A stretch of DNA of 64,000 nucleotides from IMGVR_UViG_3300031963_000004:124001-188000, one strand, 5' to 3'; counted from the first letter of the stretch, positions 1-35,951 are shown. Program-made: numbers and translations. Notes: generated from the letters alone by a model not told the origin.

Positions 1-1173
1 TGCAAAATGAGGTCCTATATCTGTTGAATACTTTTTATCGTATTCTCCGATATAACCATTGATTCTTTCAATGATAGAATCTTTAAACTCATCTGGTAAA
101 ATATGAACGTGATAATAACTAGGTTGTTCAAGTAGATTAATGAAGAAGTTTTTATACCAAAGCTTTTCTTTAATAACACCCAACTCTAGCAATTTATCAA
201 TTATCTCAGGTAGTCTGAATACGTTCATAGCACCAATAGTTAATCCAGGTCTGACTATAAGATTATCCAATTTAGTCATTGCTATAAGATTTTCTTCTAC
301 TTTAGGCCATATAGTACCGCTGCGAATTAACTCTGCTCTTGCACCTATCTCATCAATACTAGGCCAAATTTCTAACTTACCGTAATCCCATTGACTCCAG
401 TAATCTAACACATTCTTTTTACCATATTCTAATACTGAACAGTTTGTATTATATGAAAGCTTAACGTCGAAACGTTTACCTTCAACTAACATATCAAGTA
501 TCTGCCAATGCTCAGGCATTAACAATGGTTCACCACCTGCAAAGTAAATCTTCTCTACATGTTGAACCTGATCCTGTAAGAAATCATAGTTAGTTTGTTG
601 ACCGACTGCATCAATATTCCAAACTTTTTCCTGATCAGTGTAGCCTAATTTCTTTGCATCAGGTACCCATGCTGAACTATATCTTGGCCCACAGCTACGA
701 CATTTAAAATTACACAGATTACTAAATCTAAAGTCCCAATACTTTAATTTCATTTCATTACAAGTACCATCTTTTTCTGTAATGACTGGAATCTTTTTTA
801 ATACTGATTTGAATTCACGGTTGTGATATATTCTACCACTTTCACCTGTAACTTTTTCTTTGTCGTAACACTTTCTACATATCTCAGGCTCCTCGTTGTT
901 CATCATCTGTACACGGAGATTTTTCATATTGTCGCTGTTCCAAATCTGATCAATTGTTTGATGAGTTAGGTCGCCAGCAAAATAATTATATGTAGAAGTT
1001 AAGCAGCAAGGAACTACTTTACCGTTTGGTTCAAAGTTTAAGTGCATCCACGGGACTGCACATATTTTATTGTCTGTCTCTTTCATTAGCTTTCTGTATC
1101 TCCGTTTAGCATATTTGTACAACTGTGTGTTTAATAAAAATCTTTTAATCTTAACTTTAAGTGGAACTGACAT
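1..1173 (-). CDS. Radical SAM protein with N-terminal Twitch/SPASM-like Fe-S domain (partial, runs off left edge; not in ORF track)
   Basis: Manual translation gives ...KICAVPWMHLNFEPNGKVVPCC...IWNSDNMKNLR...CRKCY...WDFRFSNLCNFKCRSCGPRYSSAW...IYFAGGEPLL, with the CxxxCxxC and GGEP motifs. ATG at 1173 overlaps the upstream stop (TAATG); an alternative in-frame start is at 1086. Confidence 0.9.
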   Translation of the reverse strand, partial: MSVPLKVKIKRFLLNTQLYKYAKRRYRKLMKETDNKICAVPWMHLNFEPNGKVVPCCLTSTYNYFAGDLTHQTIDQIWNSDNMKNLRVQMMNNEEPEICRKCYDKEKVTGESGRIYHNREFKSVLKKIPVITEKDGTCNEMKLKYWDFRFSNLCNFKCRSCGPRYSSAWVPDAKKLGYTDQEKVWNIDAVGQQTNYDFLQDQVQHVEKIYFAGGEPLLMPEHWQILDMLVEGKRFDVKLSYNTNCSVLEYGKKNVLDYWSQWDYGKLEIWPSIDEIGARAELIRSGTIWPKVEENLIAMTKLDNLIVRPGLTIGAMNVFRLPEIIDKLLELGVIKEKLWYKNFFINLLEQPSYYHVHILPDEFKDSIIERINGYIGEYDKKYSTDIGPHFA

Positions 1174-2105
1174 TACCAGCCTTCAATTTTCCGTATAATG
1201 TCCATTTCTCTGACTAAGGGACCTAAATTATATTTATCGGCATTATAGTGTCGTTTGAAGAACTTCGATTGTTCTGCACTTAACGCACACATAGGTAACC
1301 CTAACTTGTCAGACAATAACTCGGCTAATTGTTTAGGTTCATTATGTTCAAATGTGTCCCATAACTTTACTAGTTCATCAAAATCTTGAACTTTGTTATA
1401 GTCCCACTCAGTTAGCATAGTCAAATATGTTCCTAATCTTGCACCATAGATAGCCCATTCACCGTTCTCAACATCCATACCCACATTCTGCCATATAGTA
1501 AGATTATTAAGATTTCTACTCGCTACACTTTCTTTAAATGAACTAATACTTGGTTTATTGCCCACTACTAGGCACATCTTTACACCTTCTCTAAATCCTG
1601 CACGCCAAGCTTGAAATGGTGTATAGTTAGGATACGTGGTTGAATAACAATCATACATGCTCCAGTATATATTGTCACTACTATCTAAACAAAAATCAAC
1701 CGTCGTCGCCGCACCGCCGTCACTATTTTCGTGTGTTCGCATATTCATGACGTAAGTTTTAGTCCAACTACTCATGCCACCATTACCGTAACGTAAACCG
1801 TTAACAGCATTAATTGCTCTCCAACGATATTGTGCGATTTGATAGGTAGGGTGTTTATCAGTGAAATCTAAATCTAAATCAAAGAATGACGGATCAGGCA
1901 TATTGTCACCGTCGATTAATATAAATCTTTCTGTGTCGCTTGCCTCTGCTGCTGCTTTGTGTGCGGCATCACTTCCCTTAACTCCATCTACTCTTTTAGC
2001 CCACGGAACCATGTTTTGAATTTTAACCCAAAATTCTTCTTTTTGTGGTTCATCATAACTAAGGTATATACAATCTAAATCTCTTACGCTTACAATCTCA
2101 GACAT
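1173..2105 (-). CDS. Putative GT-A fold glycosyltransferase
   Basis: Motifs YLSYDEP, GVKGSDAAHKAAA, FILIDGDN (DxD) and AWRAGFREGVKM; lies in a cluster of GT-like genes. Confidence 0.6.
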   Translation of the reverse strand: MSEIVSVRDLDCIYLSYDEPQKEEFWVKIQNMVPWAKRVDGVKGSDAAHKAAAEASDTERFILIDGDNMPDPSFFDLDLDFTDKHPTYQIAQYRWRAINAVNGLRYGNGGMSSWTKTYVMNMRTHENSDGGAATTVDFCLDSSDNIYWSMYDCYSTTYPNYTPFQAWRAGFREGVKMCLVVGNKPSISSFKESVASRNLNNLTIWQNVGMDVENGEWAIYGARLGTYLTMLTEWDYNKVQDFDELVKLWDTFEHNEPKQLAELLSDKLGLPMCALSAEQSKFFKRHYNADKYNLGPLVREMDIIRKIEGW

Positions 2106-2400
2106 TTTTTACGTTCCAAAAATAAGTTTCACCTGTGTAGTTTTCATTAGCTATAATAGTAATATCTTCTACAGGACATTTAGTGCCAGTTGTATCTTTT
2201 GCTAGTTTAAAAATTGTGCTAGTATACTTAATTGGTTCTATTTTACCATCTACAACCTGAACATCAAATCTACCCTCAGCATATGTCATGGCATCTATGA
2301 CCAAATAATCGCCCTCATGCATGTCGCAAGAATAGAACAACACTTTACCAAAAGTGTCATAATATAACTTAAATTCAGGTTCGTTCATAGGCTTGTTCAA
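2098..2400 (-). CDS. Hypothetical protein
   Basis: 100-aa ORF overlapping both neighbours in the operon. Confidence 0.7.
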   Translation of the reverse strand: MNKPMNEPEFKLYYDTFGKVLFYSCDMHEGDYLVIDAMTYAEGRFDVQVVDGKIEPIKYTSTIFKLAKDTTGTKCPVEDITIIANENYTGETYFWNVKNV

Positions 2401-3178
2401 GTTTATCAGAAAATTCTTTGTTATGATAGTGAAATGGATACTTTTGATAAATTGTATTAATTCTTAAACATTCTGGTAGAATTTCATAAACTAATTCGTC
2501 AGTCCAATCTTCTGTTAATAATCCATTAATATCTTTTTTCATATGAACCATTGACATATCTGTAAAGAAAGGCATCGTAGTGTTTTCTACTCCTAGTATA
2601 TGACAAGCTATTGCATATACCCAATCTGTTGTAGCCCTTTCTTTCATATCACATTTAAGTATTGTTTTATATTCTTCCCAGTTATTAAAAATTTCTTTAA
2701 TTAATTCAAAGAATTGTTTAGCGAACTCTGATTTTTTAAAGTATGTTATAGCATTGTAAGTATCAGGTAATTTGTTATCGTATATAAACTTTCTATAAGA
2801 CTTTACCTCACTAATATCACCGGTAAAATCTCGTATGTGAGTAGAAACTACGACATCCTTATGTTTCAATATATCCCACCAATAATCAATTGATCTTGTT
2901 AAACACATATCAGCTTCAAGCTTAATTGTGTAATCGTATGGGCTAGCTTCATAAACTTGCCAATCATTGATTAGTTTCCAAAAACTATTTGGTGCTAAAT
3001 CACCATAAGGTAGTGGAATTATATTATCAAAAATACTGTCTGTGCAGTCATTACTGGTAATCAAACTAACACTTGCATTTGGCATAAAGTTTTTAATACT
3101 CTTTGCTAAAACTCTAGCACATTTTATATAATCTACATTAGCTGTATTTTGGGCGAGTATAACGTAACCACACTTCAT
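2375..3178 (-). CDS. Putative glycosyltransferase (GT8-like GT-A fold)
   Basis: GYVILAQN...A..LAKSIK N-terminus, SPYDYTIKLEADM (DxD variant) and TTDWVYAIA; paralogous to 3175..3975. Confidence 0.65.
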   Translation of the reverse strand: MKCGYVILAQNTANVDYIKCARVLAKSIKNFMPNASVSLITSNDCTDSIFDNIIPLPYGDLAPNSFWKLINDWQVYEASPYDYTIKLEADMCLTRSIDYWWDILKHKDVVVSTHIRDFTGDISEVKSYRKFIYDNKLPDTYNAITYFKKSEFAKQFFELIKEIFNNWEEYKTILKCDMKERATTDWVYAIACHILGVENTTMPFFTDMSMVHMKKDINGLLTEDWTDELVYEILPECLRINTIYQKYPFHYHNKEFSDKLEQAYERT

Positions 3179-3975
3179 ACAACCTCCAAAAAGTTTTTCT
3201 TACTAAGCATATGAAGGTCTGTATCTTTTACCTCTAGATATGTAGTTTTTTCTGGTTCAAAAGGATCAGACATTGTTTTTAAAACCGACACGAATTCTGT
3301 GTTAAATTGCTTATCCGATTTACTAAAAAGTTGTAATTCATTTGACACATGTAGTAAGTCCCATGGAATAAAATTAGATTTATCTCGAATATGACCATTT
3401 AAAGTTCTTGCTGCAATAGTCAATGCATAATCATTTCTATATTGTGTAGAAAAACAATTGTGTAGAGTCACATAATGCGTGTAATTATCTTGCACCATTT
3501 TAATAAAATCAAATAAAAGGTTACTTCTATGTGTCTTTTTAAATACAATTACCGTTGCCCAATAAGTTAAGAATGTGTTAGTTCCTATTAAATCGGAACC
3601 AGCTTCTTTAAACATTAAATATTTGGCATTTTGATGGAAACAAAAATCTTCACAATAATCAAACGCTGATAATAACTTATCCGAGTTTACTAAATAATCC
3701 GTATCTAATAACAATGTTTCATCATATGGACTAAACTGATAGGCTTGATATCTTCCTTTGTTAATCCAAATTTTCTCATCTCTAAAATTACTTAAGTCGC
3801 CGGCTACGTTAATTACTTTATCAAACTGATAATTGTTGTTTGGTGTTGTTTTATCCGTAACTATAGTGACAGGTAAATTTAAAAAATGATTAATTCTTTT
3901 AGCAGTTTTGACTGCCATTGTGTAATAATCAATAGCATCATTGTTAAAAGCAAAGAGTAATGCACCGCGCTTCAT
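3175..3975 (-). CDS. Putative glycosyltransferase (GT8-like GT-A fold)
   Basis: GALLFAFNN, SPYDETLLLDTDY (DxD), YRNDYALTIA and C-terminal HMLSK. Confidence 0.7.
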   Translation of the reverse strand: MKRGALLFAFNNDAIDYYTMAVKTAKRINHFLNLPVTIVTDKTTPNNNYQFDKVINVAGDLSNFRDEKIWINKGRYQAYQFSPYDETLLLDTDYLVNSDKLLSAFDYCEDFCFHQNAKYLMFKEAGSDLIGTNTFLTYWATVIVFKKTHRSNLLFDFIKMVQDNYTHYVTLHNCFSTQYRNDYALTIAARTLNGHIRDKSNFIPWDLLHVSNELQLFSKSDKQFNTEFVSVLKTMSDPFEPEKTTYLEVKDTDLHMLSKKNFLEVV

Positions 3976-4277
3976 CTTTGCTTTCTTAATTTAGACCATT
4001 CTTCATGCCACTCAGTCATAACATCATTGTATGTTTGATGAGCCTTTATACTAAGTAATTCTGTTTCTACTTTAATTGGATTTTCATGTAAGTCTAAAAT
4101 GACTATTTCATCAGTAGTAACAGAGCCAAGAAAACTTAAAAATTCTGGTGTGGCTTTCCACAAACCACCTTGGTCTGCAAAAATTAATTTGCTCTGATAT
4201 TTGTCTTTGAGATAGTCTTTTGCTGCGTTGTGATTAAATTTGGCTTTTGCTTCTTTTAAGAATGAATTGGTGTCCAT
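3972..4277 (-). CDS. Hypothetical protein (~101 aa; start reassigned to ATG 4277)
   Basis: AGGAG RBS and a TATAAATA late promoter lie just upstream of ATG 4277 (MDTNSFLKE...); ATGA overlap with the next gene. Confidence 0.7.
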   Translation of the reverse strand: MDTNSFLKEAKAKFNHNAAKDYLKDKYQSKLIFADQGGLWKATPEFLSFLGSVTTDEIVILDLHENPIKVETELLSIKAHQTYNDVMTEWHEEWSKLRKQR

Positions 4278-4293
4278 TATATACTCCTGAGAG

Positions 4294-4301
4294 TATTTAT
4301 A
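4294..4301 (-). promoter_or_regulatory. T4-type late promoter TATAAATA
   Basis: Exact T4 gp55 late consensus upstream of the GT/radical SAM gene cluster. Confidence 0.7.
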
Positions 4302-4325
4302 ATGAACACCTTTTACCAAATTTTA

Positions 4326-6215
4326 TTAAGTGATGATTGTATCTGTGTTGGTATTTGGGAACGCTCTGTTGATGCCAGAACTACCTGACCAGATGAGTCT
4401 AACAGCTCCATGTCCACCATTACATCCTGGAGTTGTCTTAGCATCATTACTTTGTCCACCGCCACCTCCGCCTGGGAAGCCGCCTGTGTTACTTGCACCA
4501 CCTACTGTGAACAATGGGGAACCGTTGCTGCCATTACTTCCACCTTGACCTGATAAACTTCCTGAATTACCTGAACCTAATAATCCTGTACCGCCACCTG
4601 ATCCTGAAGATCCAGCTGATCCATTTGATCTATCGTGCGCACCACCTGCTGATCCGCCACCTAAACCGCCTGTAAATGATCCACTGTTTTGACTTCCGCC
4701 GCGGCCACCGGTGCCAGAATATCCACCTGCACCACCACCGCCACCAGGATAATCGCTATTACTTGAGCCACCATCACCACCGCGGCCACCGCCGTCACCT
4801 GCAAATGAACCACCAATCCCGCCTGCGTAACTTGTATTTGTGTTACTTGCTGTGCCTATACCCGCGGTTCCACCGAAGCCTGCAACAGTGCTTGAGTTAA
4901 TAAAATAACTGTCACCACCATTAGTACCTTGTCCACCTGCTGCTGCACTAACACCAACACCACCTGCACCAACTACAACAGTGTAGTTATTTCCTGGTAC
5001 TATAGGTATATTATTCTTCCAGCCGAGACCGCCACCGCCGCCACCGCCACCTGCCCAATAAGCTGCGCCGCCAGCGCCACCGCCGCCAACTGCGACAGCA
5101 TGTACACTTGTAACACCAATTGGTGCTCTCCATGTATAGACACCCGGATTAGTAAATAATGCTTCACCTGCACCGCCTGGCAATGTTGTTACTGTGCTTC
5201 CAGTAGTGTATCCTTGATAGTTAGGACTGTTAACTGCCAATACGTTACCTATAATTAATGGATTGCCCCATGTATTTGCGATATACGCGGTACTTGGTGG
5301 CCTTAATGATACTGTCACTGCGCTACCGCTACTTACCATTGATCTGCCGTAACTCAAATAATGTCCATCAGGTACTTGATCAAATTTCGTAACAATGGTG
5401 ATTACATTACCTACGTCACCATTACTACCTCTTGTGCCATTTGTTTTTACGTTTACGCTTATAAAACTCTGTAGATATTTGTAATTACCTTGCGCTGCCT
5501 TTTGCTTAAACACTTCACGATATGTTGTATTAAGATTATAATACCCCATTGATGCAGTTAGTGTAGTAGGTGCGCCAGAGCCGCCTATTCTCGTTACGCC
5601 TGAATAGTCTACACCTGCTATTTTTGTAGTACCGCTAACTGGACTACTGATTACTACAGTTCCACAATCTCTGGTTAAGTTATTCCATAATGTATTGATA
5701 CCAGTACCACTCGGGTGTGTGAAGTTGATAGCGATTTGTCCGCCTGCATTAAAGAAATGTCTTGCAGCGTCTCCGGAATCGAAGGTGATTGTATGACTAA
5801 AGAATACGTGATTATTCCATTGTTCTTGTTTTACTACGGTAGCTGAGATTGTTGCTCCCTGAGCAGCGCAATTATTTCTATTATTATAGATTGAGGTTAA
5901 TGCAGTTTCAAACGCTGAAGTAACGCTATCGTTATCTTCCGCTTCAATAATTTCAGATTCATTTATAGAGATAGTAGGAACAATAGTATTTTGATGCCTA
6001 GAAACACTATTAATGCCAGATATCAAATTATTCCAATTACCCCAAGATACAACTGCGTCTGTAGCTACTAGTGGAAGGGGTATCTGACCATATCCTGATC
6101 TTCCACTTCCCATACCATATACGGTATTGAATCTATTCGGGGCTGCACTGGGATCAGTGCCTACGTAATTATTATAGTCACTTGCTTGTATTAATCCGCC
6201 CGCAATGTAAGCCAT
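4326..6215 (-). CDS. Tail fibre / virion protein with C-terminal glycine-rich domain
   Basis: N-terminal MAY..G.LI.A.DYN and ARHFFNAGG motifs; C-terminal Gly-rich domain (VGGGGAGG...GGHGAVRLIW). Confidence 0.7.
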   Translation of the reverse strand: MAYIAGGLIQASDYNNYVGTDPSAAPNRFNTVYGMGSGRSGYGQIPLPLVATDAVVSWGNWNNLISGINSVSRHQNTIVPTISINESEIIEAEDNDSVTSAFETALTSIYNNRNNCAAQGATISATVVKQEQWNNHVFFSHTITFDSGDAARHFFNAGGQIAINFTHPSGTGINTLWNNLTRDCGTVVISSPVSGTTKIAGVDYSGVTRIGGSGAPTTLTASMGYYNLNTTYREVFKQKAAQGNYKYLQSFISVNVKTNGTRGSNGDVGNVITIVTKFDQVPDGHYLSYGRSMVSSGSAVTVSLRPPSTAYIANTWGNPLIIGNVLAVNSPNYQGYTTGSTVTTLPGGAGEALFTNPGVYTWRAPIGVTSVHAVAVGGGGAGGAAYWAGGGGGGGGLGWKNNIPIVPGNNYTVVVGAGGVGVSAAAGGQGTNGGDSYFINSSTVAGFGGTAGIGTASNTNTSYAGGIGGSFAGDGGGRGGDGGSSNSDYPGGGGGAGGYSGTGGRGGSQNSGSFTGGLGGGSAGGAHDRSNGSAGSSGSGGGTGLLGSGNSGSLSGQGGSNGSNGSPLFTVGGASNTGGFPGGGGGGQSNDAKTTPGCNGGHGAVRLIWSGSSGINRAFPNTNTDTIIT

Positions 6216-6226
6216 TTTACAATTCC

Positions 6227-7441
6227 TTATTTAATTACAACAATGGCTTCAACCGTGCCTGAACCATTCGTAGTTTTGTTAGCAAGACTTCTTCCAATAG
6301 TATTGAATGCGTTTGCTTCGCCTGGTTTAGCTGCTCTTGCATAACCCTTGCCTGCACTTACTAAACGATCACCTTTTTTAACTTTACCATTAACTTTAAC
6401 TTGAACTCTACCGCTAATAGCTACAGGAGGATGAGTATTATCTTCACCTGCACCAGTATTCATCAAGTAAGCGGCAGTGTTACTTACAACTCCGAACACG
6501 CTCTCACTTAACTCATCTCTAACAGCAGTAATTTCTTTTTCACCACCCAACTCAACAACTGTACCTGCATCATATAAGTCGTCTGCTTCAAATCTTTCTG
6601 CTAAGTCAGCATATGTTGCCTGTAATCTTGCGCCGGCTGCTAGTGTCCATATACCTGCGATAACACCGCCGCCGTCTAATCTTGTTGTAGTAACTCTTGT
6701 TGGAGCAATGTTTCCTGTAAATCTTGAAACACCATTAGCGCCAGTTAAGAAAGCAGATACGTTACTGTTAGTGTATGTACCAGCTGGATTAAATGTGACA
6801 CCGTTTGCATACATGTAGTTGTCGCACTTGATACCGTTAACACTGTTGGCTGAGAAAGCTAAGTTACCTGAGTTAACTACTACTGCGTTACCATTTGTTT
6901 GACCATATACTGTCCAAATACCAGTTAGTGTGCCTGAAGTTGTGTTATTTCCTGATGTAATTTGTTGAGTGACTACATTAGCTAAAGTAGCTGTTTGTAT
7001 TGTGCCACGCAATGCGTATAAATCACCAGTTACATTGGCATTCAAAGTAGTAATTGTGTTTCCTACTTGTAAATCAGTTAATGCTTGAATATTATTTGCT
7101 ACTAAATTGCCTGTAACTGCAACGTTTCCAAATGTAGTTGTTCCAGATTCGCCTGTAGCAGCGAGTTCTAACCAGGAATTAGCGGTTACTGTGTTGTCTG
7201 CTGGGCAAACATTTAACGTGCCTCTAGTGGTGTTAAACCAAAGTTGGCCTCTTAGTGGATTAGCAGGTGGACTAGCACTCGCAAAATTCTCTAGTATACG
7301 AACAAAGTTAGTATCAATTGTCTGTCCATATCCTGCGTAACTACGTCCGGGAAGTCCTAAAGACGTACTTGTAGTGTTGATAGTACCGTCCTGAATAGTA
7401 GTTAACGTACTTCCATCACTTCTAATAATCGTATAAGCCAT
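6227..7441 (-). CDS. Tail fibre protein with C-terminal intramolecular chaperone/autocleavage-like domain
   Basis: N-terminal LENFA...P..GQLWFN baseplate-attachment motif; C-terminal ATYADLAERF...GTVV..GG..EIT...GVVS...GRV.VKV.G.V.KGD.LVS. Confidence 0.75.
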   Translation of the reverse strand: MAYTIIRSDGSTLTTIQDGTINTTSTSLGLPGRSYAGYGQTIDTNFVRILENFASASPPANPLRGQLWFNTTRGTLNVCPADNTVTANSWLELAATGESGTTTFGNVAVTGNLVANNIQALTDLQVGNTITTLNANVTGDLYALRGTIQTATLANVVTQQITSGNNTTSGTLTGIWTVYGQTNGNAVVVNSGNLAFSANSVNGIKCDNYMYANGVTFNPAGTYTNSNVSAFLTGANGVSRFTGNIAPTRVTTTRLDGGGVIAGIWTLAAGARLQATYADLAERFEADDLYDAGTVVELGGEKEITAVRDELSESVFGVVSNTAAYLMNTGAGEDNTHPPVAISGRVQVKVNGKVKKGDRLVSAGKGYARAAKPGEANAFNTIGRSLANKTTNGSGTVEAIVVIK

Positions 7442-7463: not shown

Positions 7464-7471
7464 TATTTATC
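7464..7471 (-). promoter_or_regulatory. Late promoter (GATAAATA)
   Basis: Recurrent intergenic xxTAAATA motif upstream of structural genes. Confidence 0.55.
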
Positions 7472-8252: not shown

Positions 8253-11200
8253 TTATTTTGTACCCTGTTGCAGGAACTTAGCTGGGGCAGAATCGCTTAT
8301 TTGTAATGGATCTCCTGCTGTGTCGTTATAAATTTCACTATTCCAGCTTCTATTATAATAGAAATTAAACAACGTGTTACTTGGAGTAATTCCCACCACC
8401 GAAGAATATTTTAGGTGCATCTTGTTTATAGCAGTGCCCTGAATACCTCGTTTTAAGTTGCTTATGGTATTGTTTTGATAGTCAACTTTTGAGTATCTTA
8501 TCTTTTCTCCGTTAACGTTTATAGTGTCACCTAATCTCATAACAACATTGATTTGATCGCCCTCAGAAACTCCGTTTCTAAAGACAAGATAAGCTACACT
8601 ATTATTTGTTAATAGAGTAAAATCACTAGAATTTAATTTAGAAAGAGTGGTTTCATTATAAACTTCGGTTTCTTTGATTGTTTCTAGGTCATATATAATT
8701 CTGACCAATAATCTGTCACTATCGGCTACTACAATATATGTATCTTCTACAATATCAATTAGCTTAGAAACGTCTTTTACATGAATAACGTCTTGTAGTG
8801 GTTCTAAGTTTTCTGTCAACCAGGTTCTATTACTAGAATTTGCTCTGTAAATAAATTGATCTCCGTTTTTATCAACTTCATTCACATAAATCATTTCATT
8901 TGGTGTTGCGCTGGATACCATACTTGTAATCATTATAACGTCATCTGGTTTAATATCAGCCAAAATGCTTAAATAATTACCGTCATTTAATCTAAGTCCG
9001 TCGCTGCCCAATCTTATTCCATTAACTGAAACGTTTAATCTAGTTTTATCACTAATATCGATGGTTTGAGGTATTACATGTGTATCTTCATACTTCCACA
9101 CGAATCCACCTCCGACATATTCTGACAAGAACCTACTAGTAACTGGTCTACTTAAAGAATCATTAAACCACAATGTGATTGGGTACACATCTTTAGTGTA
9201 AGACGTTTCCGTACCTTCATCATCGTATTCAGTAAATGTTTCACTAAATTTCGTTTCTAACTTCATGTAATACGTATTATTGTTTAATTGGTTAGTACCA
9301 GAAATACCATCTATCTGAATTAAATCACCTGTAGTTAATCCAGGATCTTCGTCTGTTTCTGTTGTTATATACAAATATACCACATCCTTGTCAATCGCAA
9401 CAGCTAATAACGGAGTAACTCTCAATGTAGAAATGCTTTCTTGTAAGAAATACTGCTCTCTAGTGTCATTAAATGTAGTGATACTTATTATATCGCCCTC
9501 GTTCAACGTTGGGATAATTGCCAAAGTAGACACAGGTCCTATTGTAATAGTGTAGTCAGTGATGGGTAGTTCTAATCCATTGACTCTAACAATCCTAGGA
9601 ATATAATCATTTTCATTTTCTATTAATTGATAATCTAACGCTAGACCAGTTTGACCTGTACTGTCAAATTCAAAAACTTGTGTTTCTGGCAATGAATAAC
9701 CATAATTTTGTACCGTGCTACCAAATAATACAAAACTTATGAAATTAACGGTTGTATCATAAACTCTATCAAATAACAGCTTTGTTCTGCCGTTATCAGT
9801 AGAAGCTATTACATAATCATTAGTAAATGTTTTCTTTTCTCCGTTTATGTAAACTGCAGGATCAGCAGTCAATAATTCTTCATATTTTATATTGAATACG
9901 ATTTGGCTATGTCCTGTGGATTCATCTATAGTAACTGGTATATCATCTGACGTTGCTCTTACTAATTGATTACCATTACCGAATTCATAAACTTCAACTA
10001 AAATAATTTCTGTTTCTCTAATCTCTTTGTTTAGTGTGATTTTCTTTTGAATCCAATCAACTGAATATGTGTATTCATTATTGTCAGTTGGTGTAACGTT
10101 TGGATGAATCATTTTACTAAGGTTAGATAACGGATCCATTATAGATAATGCTAATTGTGCTGGTGCTTGTGAGAAATTAGAGAAATCAATTTCTACACCA
10201 TTAGGGGATACTTTGTTACCTATAACTTTATATCCATTATGTTGATATACTTCAGGATTCCATGTACTGCCTGATCTTGTAATTACTGTCATTGAGAATT
10301 GATCAGTAATAGCTCCTGGAACCATTTCTTCAGGACCATATCCAGAAGTGAAAGGATCACCTTTAACTTCATAGAATGTATTTGCACCGCCTATTGCAGA
10401 TACATTTTGCCATACTAATCCTTCCCAACTGCGTAGAATTGTAGCATTGTTACCTACTGCTAAGAAATGTTGTCCATCGTGTGTAACACTATTAAGATTC
10501 TGATTCGTTCCTGAGGTAATCTTAGACCATGACATACCATCATAACTAACTAAGATTAATCCATTCTGTCCTACAAACACAAACGTATTAGCAGCATAAC
10601 AACCAGCTAAAATGTTATCTGTTATAGTATCACCTTCTATTGTTCCTGCAAATATATTCTGCATGTTCGTAGAATACAATACTGTTCCGTTATCGCCACC
10701 TAAAACAATCATTTCAGGTCCACCTACTACTGTGTTCAATCCATTATTAGTTGGGTGTGGATATATTGGTGTCCATGCTCTACCATTTTCACTTAATAAT
10801 ACTCTGCCAATAGTTGTTACTTGCGCTGATACTTCTTCAGTTGGATCTTCAATAACATCTAATCCATATCCAACTGCAATAAAGCCAGCATAGAATTCAC
10901 TGTTAATGTAGTCGATATAATTTGCTCTTGCTTCTGTTCTACTTTGGAAGCTATAAACGCTGTCCCAAGCATATGCGTCTGTACTTGCTACAAGTTGATC
11001 ACCTGCTGCCACATAAAAATCATTATGGCTAGCTACATTATAAAGCCCGCCGCTGGGAGCAGTTAATGATGAGCTATCCCATGCTTCACCGGGCTCGTCA
11101 AAGTCAACTTTATCATAAGGTGTGTAACTACCTAAACCTAACCATGACAACCCGTCGTAACTTATAAAGACAGGATTGCTAGGCTTTCTAGTTGTTAATA

Positions 11201-14200
11201 CATAATGTGTTCCAGAATGTATCACGTCGGAAACTTCTAGTACATCAGCACTTATTCTCTTAATTTGCCAAGTAATACCTTCATCGTAACTCAACAATAT
11301 CATAGAATAATCTCTACCGTCTGCTACAGCAAGATACTTTTCATTATCCCATAATACGGATCTAATCTTTATATCTTTTGGATAGAATGGTTGATCTTTT
11401 AGTTGTGTATCTAAAGTATAATTTTCATCAAACTTATTTGAATAATATGTATTATTAGGGTAATCGACACCTGTTAATAATAATGGTAAGTTTTTACCTG
11501 GCATGTTAGTAGTGGGCTGATAAAAACCCACGATTCTGTCTAATGCATTTAATTCTTCTTTGTTACTATCTAAAACTTGCCATTTGTCAAAATCAAACTC
11601 TGTGTCATTGTTACTAACCAAGCACTTGTACAGTCTGTTGTTTAAGCTTACTATACTACTTGTAGTACGTGAGTATCCTGAAGTTAATTGAACAGGCTCA
11701 GGTAAGTACATATAGCTGTTATTATCAAATGGGAACGGGTTATCTTCTAATCTGACGTAACCTGCAGGATTAAACTCATTTAAATAAACAAATGCAGAGG
11801 CGTTTATAAAGATGTTGCCATTTGCTGTAGCTGTAAATGGTTCAGTACCTGCTAATTCATTTGCGGTGTCGGCTCCGATTACGGTCCAGTCTATTAATCC
11901 AACTGTTTTTACATAATAACTCTTATCTTTTACGATACTTCTTGCACTGACAGTTGTTGGCTCAACATCAGCTATTGCTCTATAGTATTTTCCATTAGCT
12001 AAAACAATGTCACCACGTTTGTAACTCTTGTTGCCTTTCCAAACTTGACTAGCAATTACAGGTCTAACCATTGGGGCATCATGATAAACTTTTAGCTGAG
12101 TTTGATTTATAGGTTTCACATAGTATTGCTTAAAGGCACCTACTGCCAACCCAGACAATTCATATAATTCCATTTTGTTAGCCTGTGTATAGACTACCTT
12201 AATTGTTGCATCATTTGCTCCGCTAACACCACCTAAATAAACACCGTCTACAGTAATTTTATCACCTACATTGTAGATTGTGCCTTTGTTAAACACTTCT
12301 ACAAAATACTCATTGTATACTTTGTTGAAAACAAAGTTAGGTCTGTAGAATTTGATTAGAGCATGGCCCTCTTCTATTGCTTTGCCTGGAGTAGATCCAA
12401 AATTAGATGGTGATAAATCTTCAATCCAAATTCTGTTTCCTACCTGATAAATAATTCCCTCGGTCTGAGCAATTAAATCCCATCTCGTATCTCCTAACTC
12501 GGCAATCACATACCATTTGTCGTACTCTAAGTTATTAGGTGCTAAAAATGCTGTGACAACTCCGGTGCCCATCCCTCTTACTACAGGCTTGATTGAATCT
12601 CCTACGTTATATGTTAAGCCTGTTGTCCCTGCCATAAAGTTCCAATTAGTATCGCCTAAAGATAAAATTTTGTATTGGTTACCTATAATTATATCTTTAA
12701 CTTTAACATGCTGAGGGTACATGTATGTAGGTGGAACTACGTAGAAATACAAAGGTAGACCTTTTAATTGTCCTGGTGATAAACTAGAACCGGTATAATC
12801 AATTGATACTGCAACTTCATTTGTGCCTTCTTCAAGTGTTACTTCTTGTATATCAAACACACGATGCTGTACACTTGATAGTGTTGAACCTGAAGCTGAT
12901 ATTGAGGAAGTACTTGACTCATCTCCTGAGGGAGAGAATTCGCTAGCATAAAATTCACCTGATTTCCATTCCGTAACTTTACTTACGTAGCTTGTTCTGT
13001 CAAACTTAAGTTTAGTAGAAATCTCTCTGGTTGGTGTGTTACTTGCAACTGCAACTGCTCTAGCTGTTAACTCTAGTTTATTATCAGTAGAAGAACCAGT
13101 GTCTATTAAGTCAATTCTATGGTTGTCTAGCTGTGCATTAACTGCTGTGCTATATAAAGCGATTATAGATTTAGCTCCAAACACTTCATCTTTCCAAAGT
13201 ACTCTTACGTGATAATATTTTTTATTTGCAAGACCCTTAATTGGGTTACCTTCACCATGCACGAATCTTACTACGTCGCCTGTGTTTAAATCCACACTAT
13301 CAATATTAATTGAGTTAACTAAAAAGTTTACAACAGAACTATTGAACTTAAATGTTTTTGAAGCTTGGATAATTATTTCAGGTGTTGCTGCGTAACCAGC
13401 ACCTGAATCTACAACTTTCACACCTACTACTTTATCGTCTGCCATAATAGGTTCAAGAACCGCTTCACGTAATGGAGCAGGATATCTAGTTGTGTCAATA
13501 TATGCTATAACAGTCGGTACATCAATGTAGTTTCTACCTGTATTAAGGACTACGACCTCAGGCAAATCTATAATAACTTTGCTATTTGGATTATGATCAG
13601 ACGCCACACTGCCTCGTAAACCCCTGCTTACGAATGTGAGTTTTCCTGCATCTCTATCAACACCTGCGTAGCCAATATATTCATTATTAATTTTGACTAC
13701 TCCGTTTACTGGTAATCCATAAGCATTATCAATATAAATTGTTTCACTAACAGGAGTAATATACTTTGTCAATGAACCTATTGTTACAGACTTTTGTCCA
13801 GTTAAAGATAATCCATAATTATCTAACCAATCAAAATAAATTGATCTGTTCCATATTGCGTCAGTTGGTCCAAATTCTCCTACTGCTGTTACAGGGAAGA
13901 AAGTTAGATTAGGAGTAATAAATTTACCTAAATTAAAATCATATTGCGCCGGTAAATCAAAATCTGTAAGTTGACCATCATATGTATCATTTACTGTATA
14001 CTTTATTGCAAACTCTTTCATAACAACATGATAAGGCTTAATCTCTTTGAGATATCCTTGCAAGAAATCTTGATTATCTGAACGATAATTCAAGTCGGCT
14101 TTCAACTCACGTAGTGTATTAGTTACATCTACTAAACTTGTTTTGTTTAACCATGTTAGGTAACAATTTGTTGATGTAGCTTCACTTATAATGTACTCAA

Positions 14201-17200
14201 ATAGGGTAATTAAACTCTTATTTCTATGAATCAACAATTCGTTTGTAAATATTTCTTCAGTCACGGACCTTACAATATATCTTGTTTCTGTGTGAGGGAA
14301 AACGTCAAAACTATCTGTATCATAGAATGTATTTCCGAATCCCAATCCAAGTATCTCATAGTTCCATAATGATTCTTTTATTTGAATGGTGCCCTGCTCA
14401 AGACCAACTCGTACCCAATCACCATTAGTATAAAGATATACCTCACGTTTGCCATCACTGTTGGTTGTTACACCAGCTAACATGTTTTCAAATGGATTCA
14501 ATGTGGCTAAATCATAATACTTTAACACTTCAACATCAGGCTTTGTATTATTATTGTAGCCGTCTGCCCACCAATATACATGCTCCCAATAATCAGGTGT
14601 GTTGAAAAACTCTCCGCTAGTTGTTAAAAAGCCCGGAGCTCCTTTTGGTACTGACTCTTTGTTAGATTCTCCGATAAAGCTTGGTGTTAAAATTTCTGAT
14701 ATAGGATGCTTGATTAAAACACTGTTTACATACTTGCAGTAATTCTCAAGTGCCTTTAATCTATTACTAAAGAAACTTTGTCTTGGTCTTACTTTAATTC
14801 CTTGCTGTAATAGCTTTGGAAGATGTATGTCAGGGACTAAATTACCTCTCTCGTCTATACCAGATAAGCTATCAAGTAGTTTATCATATAAACTCTCTGG
14901 CATTTCAAATGCAGTATACGCACTAGGTACTCCTGGTAAGAAATCATTAGGATTACCATCTTTGATTAATTTAAATTCATTATAAGAATCATCTTTTTTG
15001 ATTTTATCTGTGAATCCAATATGCAATCCCGTAGACTTACCTTTAATAGAATCTATAGCATTAAATAACCCATACACATTGTTTTGTAGTGCGGCAAAAT
15101 AACCTATACCTGAACTTTGTGGATCAGTAATATATTGTTCTAATATTGAATCAGGTAATGTTTTATCGCTACTCAAAATATTTGTACTACGTACCCAATA
15201 ATAATATTTGTTTGTCAATGCACCCGAGTTGTCAACATTATACAATGAAGTATAATATTCTATATTATATGGGGTACCTGGTCCTTGATAATTTACAGGC
15301 AACACATTGCTTTCTATCCACGTGTAAATTGTGACTGTACTGCCAGGGAATATTTTACCCCAGTTCTGTGCATTATAAAGTACATCTTCTTGATGGTAAT
15401 TTAAAAACTTTGTTGTCGAAGTGTCAAACCATATTTTACCTACAAATGCATCTCCCCAAACTAAATTACCAGTTGTTAATTGAGAGTTATATCCTGCAGG
15501 ATCTTGACTACTGATATAATCAATATTTTCAGTTACGATTCCTAACAATTTACCTTGTAGAGGGTCTATATAATCCAAAGACTCAATTCTTTCATTGTTT
15601 TCGGCATTGAATATTTGAATGTTTTGTAATCTATTAACATCAATAACATCATTAGATTTTCTAAGCACATGCCAGTTTCTTAAGTTTTGTTTGTTTTCAT
15701 AAAATACTATTCTACCATTATCAACACCTGGTTTATAATCAGGACATCCAATGATTAGATTATAATCTTTAAATTCAATAACCTTACCGTAATGCGGGTT
15801 AGCACCAATATCTAATGTTGTATCATTTGCAGCCTGTGAGTAAACAAATTTACCTAATTTGTCTGCGCTTTCATTATGATTAGCCAAATAGTCATAGATA
15901 TAAACTGAGCCGGCTGACCCCAATTCATCAACAAATTTCGTATAGTTGTTGTCAAATATAGTGTCATTAGTTGTGTCTAGATCATCTGTAAAATCGAACG
16001 TGGTTAATGATTTTCTTGTACTAGTTGGTGCTCCAACAGCAAAAGAATTATATTCATTAAACTTGATTGAGAAACCAAATTGTGATGCACCCTCTACGTT
16101 CTCAGGATCAGAGATTCTTTGACTTTCTTGATATTCAAGTATACCAATTTGTTGTAGTGTTGTAGAATTTAGTGCTTGAATTGTTAATTTTTCTTCTATA
16201 GGACCTAAGTTAGGGTCAACTAATCCTATAACAAGTTTATTATCTACTACTCTTGCATAAACATTAGTTATGTTAGCATCATTAATAGCATTTACTGCAC
16301 CTAGTAGATTAGTGGGTAATGTAACTTGATATCCGTTTATTAATATTTTACTTGAGCTAGCAAGTGAATAGTTATTAGTAGCCTGTATTATTCCGTATTT
16401 TTTACCATAGTTAGTATAGCGTACTACTAAGCCTTCTAAATTATTTTCACTTACAAAGAATGGTGCACCAACTAGTAATTCAGATCCATGTCTATTTGTG
16501 TCTAATGCATGACCAAAAGCGTTACCAGGACGAATTTCTGCTAGATTAGTTAATTGAAATTCTTGTGTCTTGAATAAATCAGGATATGATATTTCAATTA
16601 CGTCTCCCGCTTTAAGATCATACAAGAATTGTAGTCCAGCTACTGTAATTTGATATTTTGTATTTTCAATCAGCTTACCATTAACAAAAACATCTAGATA
16701 ATGATCTGTTGTTGGAGCCGAAACTGATAGATTATAATAAACCTCGGTATCCTCAACATAATCACGCTTAACATCAATCTTTTCAATAACTCTGTTTAAA
16801 ACAGCAGCCATACCCACGTTTACTATTTGATTGGGTGATGTACCATAATTCTTTAATGGCGCGCCGATAAACAATTTACTACCGTTGTAGTTTGTAGAAA
16901 GAGTAATCTTAGAAAAGTCCTGTAAGTCTCCGCCTAAGTTATAAGTTTTCACAAACTCATAGGTTTGAGCAGCAGTCTTTTTATATGTTCTTACAAAATT
17001 ACCTGATACTGTGTGAGAAGATGCATATAGCCAATTAGCATCACCCGATAATGCAATTGAATCTCCTACTCGCTGAGAATTAATTGTTATTGCAGGTTTT
17101 TCAACATAATTACCTGTTCGTGTTCGTTTAATTTGATATACATAAATTGTGCTATTTGTTCCTGGTTTAGTCACAATCATAGTATCCTGAGCGATAGCTA

Positions 17201-35054: not shown

Positions 35055-35951
35055 ATGACAATACCAACAAAAAAACCAGTAAATTACCTAAACAACAAAG
35101 ACATTCTCAAAGAAATACATGCAAGTAAAAACACATTTTGTACATATCTAGATCCAAAAAACGATCACAAGTATGATTTTATTGTGGATATGCCACATGC
35201 TAGTATTGAAGATAGTCTAAAATACGCAGCAAAACCAAAGATAATCAAAGAAGCTAAAGCTAATCGTGCAGCTAGATTATCTGTAGAAACAGGAACTACG
35301 GTTGATCCTAAGAAAGTACCAAACACAGATTTAGTGTTTAGAGTAATGACTTGGGATCATGTTCCGGTTGCCCCTAAGCAACCCAGAAAGATTGATAAGA
35401 AGAAAAGTGCAAAAGACATTTTTGAGTTTGAAGAAATCGTTGACGAGGCGTTTGTTGATCTAGAGGATCCAACTACAGCGGGAGAAGTTGATGATATGGT
35501 TCATATCAAAGTTAACTTTCCTCCTTTCCAACATTTTCGGATGGATGAAAACAAGTCGTTCCAATGCATAGGAAAAAGCCATTGGGAGGGTGACTTAACA
35601 ACAGGCACCTTTAATAAAGATCACGGCAACATAACCAATAAGCTAGCCCGTATGTATATTATGTTATGTGAAAAATACGCTATGAAATATAATTGGCGTG
35701 GATATACGTACAATGATGAGATGCGTAATAGTGCCATTTTACAGTTAACCTATGTTGGGTTAAGATTCAATGAGGCAAAGTCGGCTAACCCATTCGCATA
35801 TTATACTGCCGCAATCACTAATAGTTTTTGTAGAGTGTTGAATTCAGAAAAACGAAATCAAAACATTCGTGACGATATCTTAGAGATGAATGGACTAAAT
35901 CCAAGTTGGAGTAGACAAGGGGCCGAAGGCTCAACCGTTTACGAAGAATAA
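35055..35951 (+). CDS. gp55: Late-transcription sigma factor, T4 gp55-like
   Basis: YLNNKDILKEI...NWRGYTYNDEM...LRFNEAKSANPFAYYTAAITNSF.RVLN.EKRNQ; precedes gp47/gp46 as in T4. Confidence 0.85.
   Translation: MTIPTKKPVNYLNNKDILKEIHASKNTFCTYLDPKNDHKYDFIVDMPHASIEDSLKYAAKPKIIKEAKANRAARLSVETGTTVDPKKVPNTDLVFRVMTWDHVPVAPKQPRKIDKKKSAKDIFEFEEIVDEAFVDLEDPTTAGEVDDMVHIKVNFPPFQHFRMDENKSFQCIGKSHWEGDLTTGTFNKDHGNITNKLARMYIMLCEKYAMKYNWRGYTYNDEMRNSAILQLTYVGLRFNEAKSANPFAYYTAAITNSFCRVLNSEKRNQNIRDDILEMNGLNPSWSRQGAEGSTVYEE

What the first reader, a model, noticed from the sequence alone, without database searches (positions are those of the whole stretch)
1..4301. Late-promoter-driven glycosyltransferase and radical SAM cluster attached to the tail operon: candidate virion modification system
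Seen: an exact TATAAATA late promoter (4294-4301) heads a tightly coupled run of overlapping genes (hypothetical, GT, GT, hypothetical, GT-like, Twitch radical SAM) directly after the tail fibre genes. Established: T4-type DNA glucosylation genes act before or during replication, while chloroviruses and some actinophages glycosylate virion proteins with their own GTs. Inference: late timing and position favour modification of virion proteins or the host surface over DNA, with the radical SAM enzyme tailoring a sugar or peptide.
Basis: partly seen in the sequence, partly recalled or inferred. Interest (0 to 1): 0.7.

Follow-up and report, generated by a model that had tools for sequence, protein, structure and literature searches.

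The report
Phage tail-fibre-linked glycosyltransferase and radical SAM module
An uncultured freshwater jumbo phage carries, right after its tail-fibre genes, a conserved late-promoter-driven set of three sugar-transferring enzymes plus radical SAM and carbamoyl-transfer enzymes. It most likely decorates a phage protein with a tailored sugar chain, but this has never been tested experimentally.

Summary
TATAAATA at 4294-4301 (minus strand) lies 16 nt before the ATG of a 101-aa gene that heads a run of overlapping genes: A101, two GT-A enzymes (B266, C267), D100, a third unnamed GT-A enzyme (E310), and an N-terminal-twitch radical SAM.

The exact 8-mer is rare in this genome. The real late motif is NATAAATA with G preferred: 39 of 62 sites lie within 60 nt upstream of a gene start.

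The operon continues about 7.9 kb past the window's left edge: a second radical SAM, a GDS-motif protein, a carbamoyltransferase and a 1220-aa protein.

Genes A to E follow the fibre genes in 80 of 80 related viral contigs and in Ralstonia phage RsoM2USA. The radical SAM part varies.

In bacteria, the E310 domain is fused to GT-B enzymes beside leader-peptide genes and C39 exporters, once with a homologous radical SAM. This points to a peptide or protein acceptor. Complete relatives lack any hydroxymethyl-pyrimidine enzyme, which argues against DNA glycosylation.

Virion glycosylation is the best reading (about 0.45) but is unproven. More distant relatives drive the module from a sigma-70-like promoter behind a terminator, so late timing is not conserved.

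The parts
4294..4301 (-). Late-promoter-like element TATAAATA. It is a T variant of this genome's NATAAATA motif and lies 16 nt upstream of the A101 start, with AGGAG at 4288-4284.
   Evidence: The position is conserved as (T)CTAAATAC in 16 of 16 closest relatives.
3972..4277 (-). A101, a 101-aa helical protein and the first gene of the module. Its function is unknown. There is a structural lead to DUF4376 / tail-fibre-assembly proteins.
   Evidence: No Pfam or PHROG hit. Atlas structure TM 0.76 / 0.65 to DUF4376 / Caudo_TAP clusters. The DUF4376 HMM finds nothing in the genome. Present in 80 of 80 related loci. 32% identical to RsoM2USA ORF354.
3175..3975 (-). B266, a GT-A fold glycosyltransferase of the retaining GT6/GT8-like type. 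Its DTD motif (D91, D93) is invariant.
   Evidence: Model pLDDT 90.1. Foldseek PDB E about 1e-6, TM 0.43-0.50 to alpha-1,3-GalT, glycogenin, GlyE and Skp1 GalT. Alignment invariants. No Pfam hit.
2375..3178 (-). C267, a paralogue of B266. It is GT-A and has EAD in place of DXD.
   Evidence: BLASTP B against C: 25% identity, E 4e-12. phrog_1903 E 6e-9. Atlas neighbours are named nucleotide-diphospho-sugar transferase.
2098..2388 (-). D100, 96 aa counted from ATG 2388. It is a small conserved protein with an RLYYD motif and a nearly invariant Cys71. It overlaps both neighbouring genes. It may be an accessory subunit or the acceptor.
   Evidence: tblastn detects it in 68 of 80 loci. Complex prediction with E310 gave no answer.
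1173..2105 (-). E310, an unnamed GT-A-fold family with an IDGDN (DXD) motif and a C-terminal helical domain. It is the most conserved gene of the module.
   Evidence: Model pLDDT 91.5. GT-A matches: VIA Z 9.8 to B4GALNT1, 8.7 ThuS, 8.2 SunS, 8.0 PBCV-1 A64R. More than 8000 clusters at 90% identity and 1192 at 50%. Found fused to GT-B enzymes in bacteria.
1231..1238 (-). GATAAATA inside the 3' end of E310, 57 nt upstream of the radical SAM start. It is a possible internal late promoter and is unverified.
1..1173 (-). F443, an N-terminal-twitch radical SAM, residues 1-391 of 443. The gene ends 158 nt beyond the window. CX3CX2C at residues 154-161. Auxiliary-cluster cysteines at 38, 56, 57, 99 and 102.
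   Evidence: NF033640 E 1.9e-106, 356 bits against cut-off 170. SPASM at residues 38-103 followed by Radical_SAM at 150-249..
4326..6215 (-). p629, a glycine-rich fibre-like protein directly upstream of the module. It is context and a candidate acceptor.
   Evidence: PF21722 Gly_rich_2, 33.7 bits against cut-off 24.3. phrog_4474 E 7e-35. phrog_863 E 8e-14. 21% Gly.
6227..7441 (-). p404, a fibre or spike-like protein with a C-terminal intramolecular-chaperone-like domain. It has its own GATAAATA at 7464-7471. It is context.
   Evidence: Peptidase_G2 IMC domain E 3.5e-5, just under the cut-off. phrog_14394 virion structural protein.

Best explanation
This is a phage-encoded, cytoplasmic glycosylation module that acts on a protein.

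Three soluble GT-A glycosyltransferases (B266, C267, E310) build a short glycan. Two small conserved proteins (A101, D100) are encoded with them.

Downstream tailoring enzymes differ between related phages. Here they are an N-twitch radical SAM, a second radical SAM, a GDS-motif protein, an O-carbamoyltransferase-family enzyme, and a 1220-aa protein with a degenerate E310-like domain. These would diversify the glycan or its attachment site.

In this phage the genes are transcribed late from a gp55-type NATAAATA promoter, and probably also by read-through from the fibre genes. The most likely acceptor is a virion protein of the distal tail: the adjacent fibre proteins p404 and p629, or the module's own small protein D100.

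Shown here: the promoter motif class, gene coupling, the folds, family memberships, the synteny and the bacterial contexts.

Inferred: that transfer is to protein, which protein it is, and what the radical SAM enzymes do.
For: 1. The late motif is real in this genome and the site fits it. A gp55-like sigma factor is present. The closest relatives keep a CTAAATAC element at the same place.
2. B266 and E310 model confidently as GT-A enzymes with conserved DXD motifs, and C267 is a paralogue of B266.
3. The order fibre genes, A, B, C, D, E is kept on one strand in 80 of 80 IMG/VR loci. It is also kept in phage-like contigs down to about 43% E310 identity, and in the cultured jumbo phage RsoM2USA, behind proteins found in its virions.
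4. In bacteria the E310 domain is fused to GT-B glycosyltransferases. These sit beside Peptidase_C39 ABC exporters, HlyD adaptors and small ORFs with double-glycine leaders (for L133). One such cluster also holds a radical SAM homologous to F443 over its full length, E 2.5e-40.
5. E310-like genes and N-twitch radical SAMs are also neighbours in Bdellovibrionia chromosomes.
6. None of the ten proteins has a transmembrane segment.
7. The contig has a true ThyA (359 bits). Two relatives at 92% or more completeness carry the module and have no thymidylate-synthase-family gene.
8. The phage also encodes a sugar-nucleotide epimerase/dehydratase and an aminotransferase elsewhere.
9. Virions of XacN1, the sister phage of RsoM2USA, contain at least two glycoproteins (PMC5852040).
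Against: - No glycoprotein has been shown for this phage or for any phage carrying the module.
- Adjacency to the fibre genes could simply be inherited synteny.
- In 20 of 22 more distant relatives the module is separated from the fibre gene by a terminator and has a sigma-70-like promoter, so late co-expression with the fibres is not conserved.
- The phage has no leader-peptide gene or exporter. The bacterial analogy rests on domains that are 33-41% identical.
- The GT-A fold does not identify the acceptor. E310 also matches wall-teichoic-acid glycosyltransferases (TarP, TarS, RmlT) and nucleotidyltransferases at similar scores.
- XacN1 itself lacks E310.
- The resemblance of A101 to tail-fibre assembly proteins is only a structural lead.
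Confidence: 0.45

Rival explanations
1. Host-envelope remodelling. The glycosyltransferases and tailoring enzymes alter a host surface polysaccharide (LPS, capsule or a similar glycan) during infection. This could block superinfection or stop progeny from re-adsorbing to debris.
For: E310 resembles the phage-encoded and bacterial wall-teichoic-acid glycosyltransferases TarP, TarS and RmlT about as well as it resembles protein glycosyltransferases. The region next to the operon is a variable block of host-type genes: PstS, a phosphate porin, and GT2 in relatives. A sigma-70-like promoter in more distant relatives would fit earlier expression. Carbamoyltransferases of this family act on sugars (established knowledge of NodU/NolO/TobZ).
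Against: No protein of the operon has a membrane segment or signal peptide. There is no flippase, polymerase or lipid-carrier transferase. The five core genes are as conserved as structural genes and are fixed behind the fibre genes in 80 of 80 loci, unlike host-range-specific accessory genes. The bacterial contexts of E310 point to peptides.
Confidence: 0.2
2. A phage-made glycosylated peptide or small molecule that is not part of the virion. This would be a RiPP-like or aminoglycoside-like product released or used inside the cell, for example against competitors or host defences.
For: The E310 and N-twitch radical SAM pair occurs in bacterial clusters with exported leader peptides. The enzyme set (glycosyltransferases, twitch radical SAM, carbamoyltransferase, with an aminotransferase and epimerase elsewhere) resembles natural-product tailoring sets. 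The tailoring part is highly variable between phages.
Against: No double-glycine leader peptide, exporter or protease lies in or near the phage operon. The module's fixed position in the late structural block is not explained. No scaffold-forming enzyme for a small molecule was seen.
Confidence: 0.15
3. DNA hypermodification. The glycosyltransferases glycosylate modified bases in phage DNA and the radical SAM and carbamoyl enzymes tailor the adduct, protecting the genome from restriction.
For: Phage glycosyltransferases classically act on hydroxymethyl-cytosine DNA, and radical SAM enzymes take part in some thymidine hypermodification pathways (established knowledge). The fold alone does not exclude a DNA acceptor.
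Against: The contig has a bona fide ThyA at 359 bits and no second thymidylate-synthase-family gene. G003 (100% complete, terminal repeats) and G002 (92% complete) both carry the module and have no thymidylate-synthase-family gene at all. The enzymes are GT-A, unlike the GT-B T4 enzymes. The module is late-promoter driven here and sits in the structural block.
Confidence: 0.07

Closest known systems
Virus-encoded virion glycosylation: chlorovirus PBCV-1 A64R and capsid glycans, and the mycobacteriophage and Gordonia phage glycosyltransferases next to structural genes
   Same: The glycosyltransferases are virus-encoded, soluble, GT-A and sit beside structural genes. E310 matches A64R (Foldseek E 3e-4, VIA Z 8.0) and weakly matches Che8 and Gordonia phage glycosyltransferases.
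   Different: There is no sequence-level relationship. The matches cover only the nucleotide-binding core, with TM 0.3-0.4. Here the glycosyltransferases are coupled to radical SAM and carbamoyltransferase genes and to two small proteins. No glycoprotein has been shown.
Glycocin biosynthesis: SunS/ThuS S- and O-glycosyltransferases with a double-glycine leader peptide and a C39 ABC exporter
   Same: Bacterial homologues of E310 sit in clusters with double-glycine leader peptides, C39 exporters and HlyD adaptors. The E310 core aligns to ThuS and SunS at Z 8.7 and 8.2.
   Different: The phage operon has no leader peptide, protease or exporter. E310 is not a Pfam GT2 member. The bacterial enzymes are GT-B-E310 fusions and partner with an N-twitch radical SAM, which known glycocin clusters lack as far as I know.
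T4 late transcription: gp55-dependent TATAAATA promoters
   Same: A gp55-type sigma factor is encoded. An ATAAATA core sits 15-25 nt upstream of the starts of structural genes.
   Different: The first base is G in 24 of 39 sites and T in only 2. The closest relatives use CTAAATA. More distant relatives drive this module from a sigma-70-like promoter after a terminator. That arrangement resembles the PeSL promoter-terminator cassettes of T4-type phages (PMC2839356, PMC4122927).
T4 DNA glucosylation: alpha- and beta-glucosyltransferases acting on hydroxymethyl-cytosine
   Same: The sugar transferases are phage-encoded.
   Different: The T4 enzymes are GT-B and are made early, and they need dCMP hydroxymethylase. 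Here the enzymes are GT-A and late, and carriers of the module lack any thymidylate-synthase-family hydroxymethylase.
NodU/NolO/CmcH/TobZ O-carbamoyltransferases
   Same: The 496-aa protein downstream has both family domains (PF02543 E 1.8e-38, PF16861 E 4.6e-50, phrog_1601 E 3e-99).
   Different: Its substrate is unknown. It is present in only 10 of 80 related loci, so it is an optional tailoring step.

Membership tests
T4-type late promoter (gp55-dependent) | The phage encodes a gp55-family late sigma factor. | tested here: met
   Window 35055-35948 (+): phrog_12791 E 3.5e-70, phrog_234 E 3.9e-22.
T4-type late promoter (gp55-dependent) | A TATAAATA-like -10 element recurs just upstream of late or structural genes, more often than chance. 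| tested here: met
   Of 62 ATAAATA sites, 39 lie within 60 nt upstream of same-strand starts. The consensus is NATAAATA with G preferred. The exact TATAAATA is rare.
T4-type late promoter (gp55-dependent) | Transcripts start a few nt downstream of the element late in infection. | not testable with these tools
   No RNA run holding the sequence was listed. Three metatranscriptomes from the same study gave no reads.
GT-A fold glycosyltransferase | A Rossmann-like GT-A fold with a conserved DXD metal and nucleotide-sugar motif. | tested here: met
   B266: pLDDT 90, GT6/GT8 matches at E 1e-6, invariant D91 and D93. E310: pLDDT 91.5, Z up to 9.8, D65 and D67 at least 90% conserved. C267 is a paralogue with EAD. 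Nucleotidyltransferases share the fold and score similarly for E310.
GT-A fold glycosyltransferase | Measured transfer of a sugar from a nucleotide sugar to an acceptor. | not testable with these tools
   This needs an enzyme assay.
NF033640 N-terminal-twitch radical SAM | A full-length match above the curated cut-off, a CX3CX2C motif, and an N-terminal SPASM/twitch cysteine cluster. | tested here: met
   356.5 bits against cut-off 170, model positions 2-395 of 398. SPASM at residues 38-103 lies before Radical_SAM at 150-249. CNFKCRSC at residues 154-161.
Glycocin / RiPP biosynthetic cluster | A precursor peptide with a leader, and a leader-cleaving exporter, next to the modifying enzymes. | tested here: not met
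   The phage operon has no such genes. The bacterial clusters holding E310 homologues do have them.
Virion protein glycosylation system | The glycosyltransferase genes lie within or adjoin the structural gene block. | tested here: met
   The module follows the fibre-like genes in 80 of 80 loci and in RsoM2USA.
Virion protein glycosylation system | A glycan is detected on a virion protein and depends on the phage glycosyltransferases. | not testable with these tools
   The only indirect precedent is glycoproteins in XacN1 virions, and XacN1 lacks E310.
T4-type DNA glycosylation | A hydroxymethyl-pyrimidine pathway (a dCMP or dUMP hydroxymethylase of the thymidylate synthase family) that supplies the acceptor base. 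| tested here: not met
   This contig has only a ThyA-grade protein (359 bits). Complete or near-complete carriers G003 and G002 have none.
Tail-fibre assembly protein (DUF4376 / Caudo_TAP), for A101 | A sequence or profile match to the family. | tested here: inconclusive
   Atlas structural TM is 0.57-0.76 to DUF4376 / Caudo_TAP clusters. There is no Pfam hit, the PF14301 search of the genome found nothing at E up to 10, and no homologue carries the family.

The most novel reading that the evidence does not exclude
The module is a phage-domesticated relative of an undescribed bacterial RiPP pathway, consisting of the E310-type glycosyltransferase and an N-twitch radical SAM. It post-translationally glycosylates a phage protein and tailors it by radical chemistry. 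The target would be the module's own small protein D100, at its nearly invariant cysteine, or the glycine-rich fibre tip. Swapping the tailoring genes would then give the tail a hypervariable, enzyme-written surface. This would be the first radical-SAM-dependent modification of a virion protein. It would also assign a function to a very abundant protein family that has no Pfam or NCBIfam match, with more than 8000 sequence clusters.
Probability: 0.2. Interest if true: 0.85.

Novelty: new variant of a known kind. Interest (0 to 1): 0.6.

Why it matters
Virus-encoded glycosylation of virions is well documented only for chloroviruses and some actinophages. If it holds here, it would add several points.

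- It would be a core trait of a large and environmentally abundant clade of T4-related jumbo phages. This phage recurs nearly identically in at least 20 lake and other freshwater metagenome runs from 2019 to 2025.
- It would be carried out by enzyme families with no current annotation.
- It would be coupled to radical SAM chemistry.
- It would point to fibre glycans as a possible determinant of host recognition or of evasion of host defences.
- It would give a function to the N-twitch radical SAM family.
- It would flag a new type of bacterial glycosylated-peptide gene cluster.

One cultured phage, RsoM2USA, carries the module, so the idea can be tested directly.

Tried and rejected
- **DNA search of 1-4400 against cultured phages:** no match.
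- **Family searches:** Pfam, PHROG and NCBIfam name none of A101, B266, D100 or E310. PDB profile searches gave only chance-level hits: GmaR at E 0.18 for E310 and nothing for B266. phmmer of the two radical SAMs, H271 and the 1220-aa protein against PDB gave nothing useful.
- **T4 consensus:** I first took the rarity of exact TATAAATA as evidence against a promoter. I dropped that reading after the de novo motif analysis.
- **A101 as a tail-fibre assembly protein:** this remains a structural lead only. In more distant relatives a terminator separates A101 from the fibre gene, so it belongs with the glycosyltransferases.
- **E310 with D100 complex prediction:** no answer, so it is not evidence either way.
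- **Shared acceptor motif:** the PYG motif of the bacterial core peptides was not found in the phage fibre proteins.
- **Leader peptides:** the small ORFs at the operon's end are small hydrophobic proteins, not leader peptides.
- **RNA evidence:** none was listed and none was laid.
- **Literature:** searches for the NCBIfam accession, and for twitch radical SAM together with phage glycosyltransferase, found nothing.
- **Rhodobacterales E310 homologues:** their context (a GT1 neighbour and caspase/Sel1 proteins) said nothing about the acceptor.


Full report
**What is there.** All genes of the finding are on the minus strand. TATAAATA is at 4294-4301, AGGAG at 4288-4284, and the ATG of a 101-aa gene (A101) at 4277. 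The run then continues:
- B266 (3975-3175)
- C267 (3178-2375)
- D100 (2388-2098)
- E310 (2105-1173)
- a radical SAM gene that starts at 1173 and runs off the window

Successive genes overlap by 4, 4, 14, 8 and 1 nt. The window is bases 124001-188000 of a single 223,151-bp viral contig with 36.5% GC. IMG/VR and CheckV rate the contig linear and about 63% complete. Near-identical sequence is held by at least 20 lake and other freshwater metagenome runs from 2019 to 2025.

**Is the promoter more than chance?** The exact 8-mer is under-represented. The window has 3 copies against 11.9 expected, and the contig has 9 against about 46.

A de novo count of words in 75 upstream regions gave ATAAATA in 27 of them against 0.7 expected, and GATAAATA in 16 against 0.3. 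Genome-wide there are 62 ATAAATA sites, and 39 of them lie within 60 nt upstream of a same-strand start, mostly at 15-25 nt. The preceding base is G in 24, C in 7, A in 6 and T in 2.

The phage encodes a gp55-type late sigma factor at 35055-35948, along with T4-like baseplate, portal and gp46/47 genes. Its portal is closest to the jumbo phages PA5oct, Atu_ph07 and Phosso, at 50-55% identity.

The site at 4294-4301 is therefore a credible late promoter of this phage's own NATAAATA class, in an uncommon T variant. A second element, GATAAATA at 1231-1238, lies inside E310, 57 nt before the radical SAM start. I could not verify that one.

**The proteins.** Pfam, PHROG and NCBIfam name none of A101, B266, D100 or E310.
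- **B266** models at pLDDT 90.1. It matches retaining GT-A enzymes (alpha-1,3-galactosyltransferase, glycogenin, GlyE, Skp1 galactosyltransferase) at Foldseek E about 1e-6 and TM 0.43-0.50. Its DTD motif is invariant among 42 homologues.
- **C267** is a paralogue of B266, at 25% identity and E 4e-12. Its Atlas neighbours are called nucleotide-diphospho-sugar transferases.
- **E310** models at pLDDT 91.5 as a GT-A core plus a helical C-terminal domain. Matches are moderate: PBCV-1 A64R, RmlT, TarP, TarS and BcsA by Foldseek, and Z 9.8 to B4GALNT1, 8.7 to ThuS, 8.2 to SunS and 8.0 to A64R by VIA. Nucleotidyltransferases score similarly. D65 and D67 of its IDGDN motif are at least 90% conserved.
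- **The radical SAM** (443 aa) matches NF033640, the N-terminal-twitch family, at 356 bits against a cut-off of 170.
- **Membrane segments.** No protein of the operon has one.

**Beyond the window.** The operon continues leftwards for about 7.9 kb:
- a 313-aa radical SAM
- a 271-aa protein with only a GDS motif
- a 496-aa carbamoyltransferase (PF02543 and PF16861; phrog_1601 E 3e-99)
- a 1220-aa protein

The last 230 residues of the 1220-aa protein resemble E310 but have lost the DXD motif. The operon ends near a palindromic terminator at genome position about 116,100. It faces a block of host-type genes: PstS, a phosphate porin and a BPL_N/GATase protein.

**Conservation.** E310 has more than 8000 homologous clusters at 90% identity, and the top 120 are 74-90% identical to it. 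At 50% identity it has 1192 clusters.

In 80 of 80 IMG/VR loci the order is kept on one strand: giant protein, p48, p205, p404, p629-like fibre, A, B, C, D, E. E310 is 57-76% identical across these loci, the fibre only 27-47%.

Downstream, radical SAM genes are nearly always present (75 of 80) but are different ones, at 19-36% identity and variable distance. Some relatives have B12-binding and SPASM radical SAMs in the opposite orientation. The carbamoyltransferase is present in 10 of 80.

Among about 50,700 cultured phage genomes, only Ralstonia phage RsoM2USA has the module. Its ORF354-349 follow the same order. They sit behind a fibre-like ORF355 and behind ORF356, 359 and 361, which were detected in its virions (PMC8504454).

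**What the bacterial relatives say.** The E310 domain is the C-terminal half of bacterial proteins of about 740 aa whose N-terminal half is a GT-B (MGT/MurG-like) glycosyltransferase. I examined four such genes by context, plus a Paraburkholderia MAG locus, L133, that came up in the panel search.
- Three of the four genes (P0180, P0197, P0247) and L133 lie beside a Peptidase_C39 ABC exporter.
- The P0180 and P0197 clusters (L093, L096) also have a HlyD adaptor.
- Three contigs (L093, L097, L098) carry small ORFs with double-glycine leaders followed by Ser/Thr/Gly/Tyr/Cys-rich cores.
- The contig of the fourth gene (P0205, L098) is short and shows only the leader peptide.

One cluster (L096) also has a 409-aa radical SAM that aligns with the phage enzyme over its full length, at 29% identity and E 2.5e-40. 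In Bdellovibrionia chromosomes, tandem E310-like genes are followed by an N-twitch radical SAM.

The glycosyltransferase and the radical SAM are therefore a recurrent pair. Where the context can be read, the substrate is a ribosomal peptide.

**Testing the DNA alternative.** The contig has one thymidylate-synthase-family gene, and at 359 bits it is a genuine ThyA. Three large relatives carry the module:
- G001 (100% complete) has one ThyA.
- G003 (100% complete, with terminal repeats) has no thymidylate-synthase-family gene.
- G002 (92% complete) has none either.

The module therefore does not travel with a hydroxymethyl-pyrimidine pathway.

**Timing is not conserved.** The 16 closest relatives I checked keep (T)CTAAATAC about 22 nt before the A101 start, and another copy before p404. 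This supports the late promoter by conservation of position.

In contrast, 20 of 22 more distant relatives have a GC-rich terminator hairpin before A101, followed by TTTACYTTT, a spacer and TGTATAAT. This resembles the promoter-terminator (PeSL) cassettes of T4-type phages (PMC2839356, PMC4122927). This phage's own early promoters are of the sigma-70 type, TTGACAnTAAATC-N-TATAAT, at genome positions 80-101 kb.

Two consequences follow. A101 belongs to the glycosyltransferase module rather than to the fibre operon. And the argument from late timing applies to this phage and its close relatives only.

**Most likely mechanism and rivals.** I favour a soluble protein-glycosylation module whose core glycan is built by B266, C267 and E310 and then diversified by exchangeable tailoring enzymes. 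It would act on a distal-tail protein or on D100, whose Cys71 is nearly invariant. I put this at about 0.45.

The rivals are host-envelope glycan remodelling (0.2), a non-virion glycosylated peptide or small molecule (0.15), and DNA hypermodification (0.07). What the radical SAM enzymes do, on the sugar or on the peptide, is open.

**Comparison and novelty.** The module works like known virus-encoded virion glycosylation (PBCV-1, actinophages). However, it shares only the GT-A core with those enzymes. It adds a radical SAM partner and is a fixed part of the tail block in a very abundant clade.

It is not a glycocin cluster, because it has no precursor or exporter. It is not a T4-type DNA glucosylation system either.

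XacN1, the sister phage of RsoM2USA, has at least two virion glycoproteins (PMC5852040) but lacks E310. That is a precedent only.

**Dead ends.**
- The complex prediction for E310 with D100 gave no answer.
- No RNA run held the sequence.
- The DUF4376 profile did not match A101.
- PDB sequence searches were uninformative.

Noticed in passing
window 8253-23993 (-): A single 5246-aa ORF lies between the baseplate-wedge gene and the fibre genes. Relatives have 4400-5500-aa versions, and RsoM2USA has a 2541-aa virion protein at the same place.
   Followed up: partly
L037-L085, about 35 nt upstream of the A101 homologue (for example L043:7762-7790): More distant relatives have a terminator hairpin plus the sigma-70-like promoter TTTACYTTT-N-TGTATAAT before the module. 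The arrangement is PeSL-like. The strict pattern occurs only once in each of two genomes of about 330 kb.
   Followed up: partly
L093:8915-16383, L096:1-9250, L097:4876-11984, L098:581-3463 (bacterial contigs): Apparently undescribed bacterial gene clusters: a double-glycine leader peptide, a GT-B-E310 fusion glycosyltransferase, HlyD, a C39 ABC exporter and a small GT-like protein. In L096 there is also an N-twitch radical SAM and a second fusion glycosyltransferase.
   Followed up: partly
L001:8838-12503 (-), genome 116835-120497: The 1220-aa last gene of the operon holds about four internal repeats with an FGTQW...GGP motif. Its C-terminal E310-like domain has lost the DXD motif.
   Followed up: partly
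L001:4508-7678 (+), genome 112514-115678: Host-type genes face the operon: PstS, a phosphate-selective porin O/P, and a BPL_N/GATase-like protein. Relatives have a similar but not identical set, which adds GT2 and a metallophosphatase.
   Followed up: no
genome 80573-100668 (-), outside the window: A family of near-identical sigma-70-type promoters, TTGACA(A/G)TAAATC-N-TATAAT, precedes small non-structural genes. They lie in the block that also holds a MoxR-like AAA ATPase and a VWA/DUF2201 metallopeptidase-like gene. These are probably the phage's early promoters.
   Followed up: partly
L092:8747-10796 (-), genome 92744-94796: A sugar-nucleotide epimerase/dehydratase lies next to ThyA. A class-V aminotransferase and a methyltransferase are nearby. 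They could supply unusual sugars to the module.
   Followed up: no
window 35055-35951 (+): The gp55-like late sigma factor is 298 aa. The match to the general late-sigma family covers only residues 188-289, so it carries a long N-terminal extension.
   Followed up: no
window 31219-31226 (-) and 40711-40718 (-): These are the other two exact TATAAATA copies in the window. Neither lies within 60 nt upstream of an ORF of 60 aa or more in my gene list. The first is inside the 883-aa gene.
   Followed up: no
L099, L100, L101-L106 and others (genome contigs): Several MAGs labelled as Haliscomenobacter, Polynucleobacter, Fischerella, Legionellales, Rickettsiales and others contain contigs with the full phage fibre-plus-module arrangement. 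These are probably phage contigs binned into bacterial genomes.
   Followed up: no
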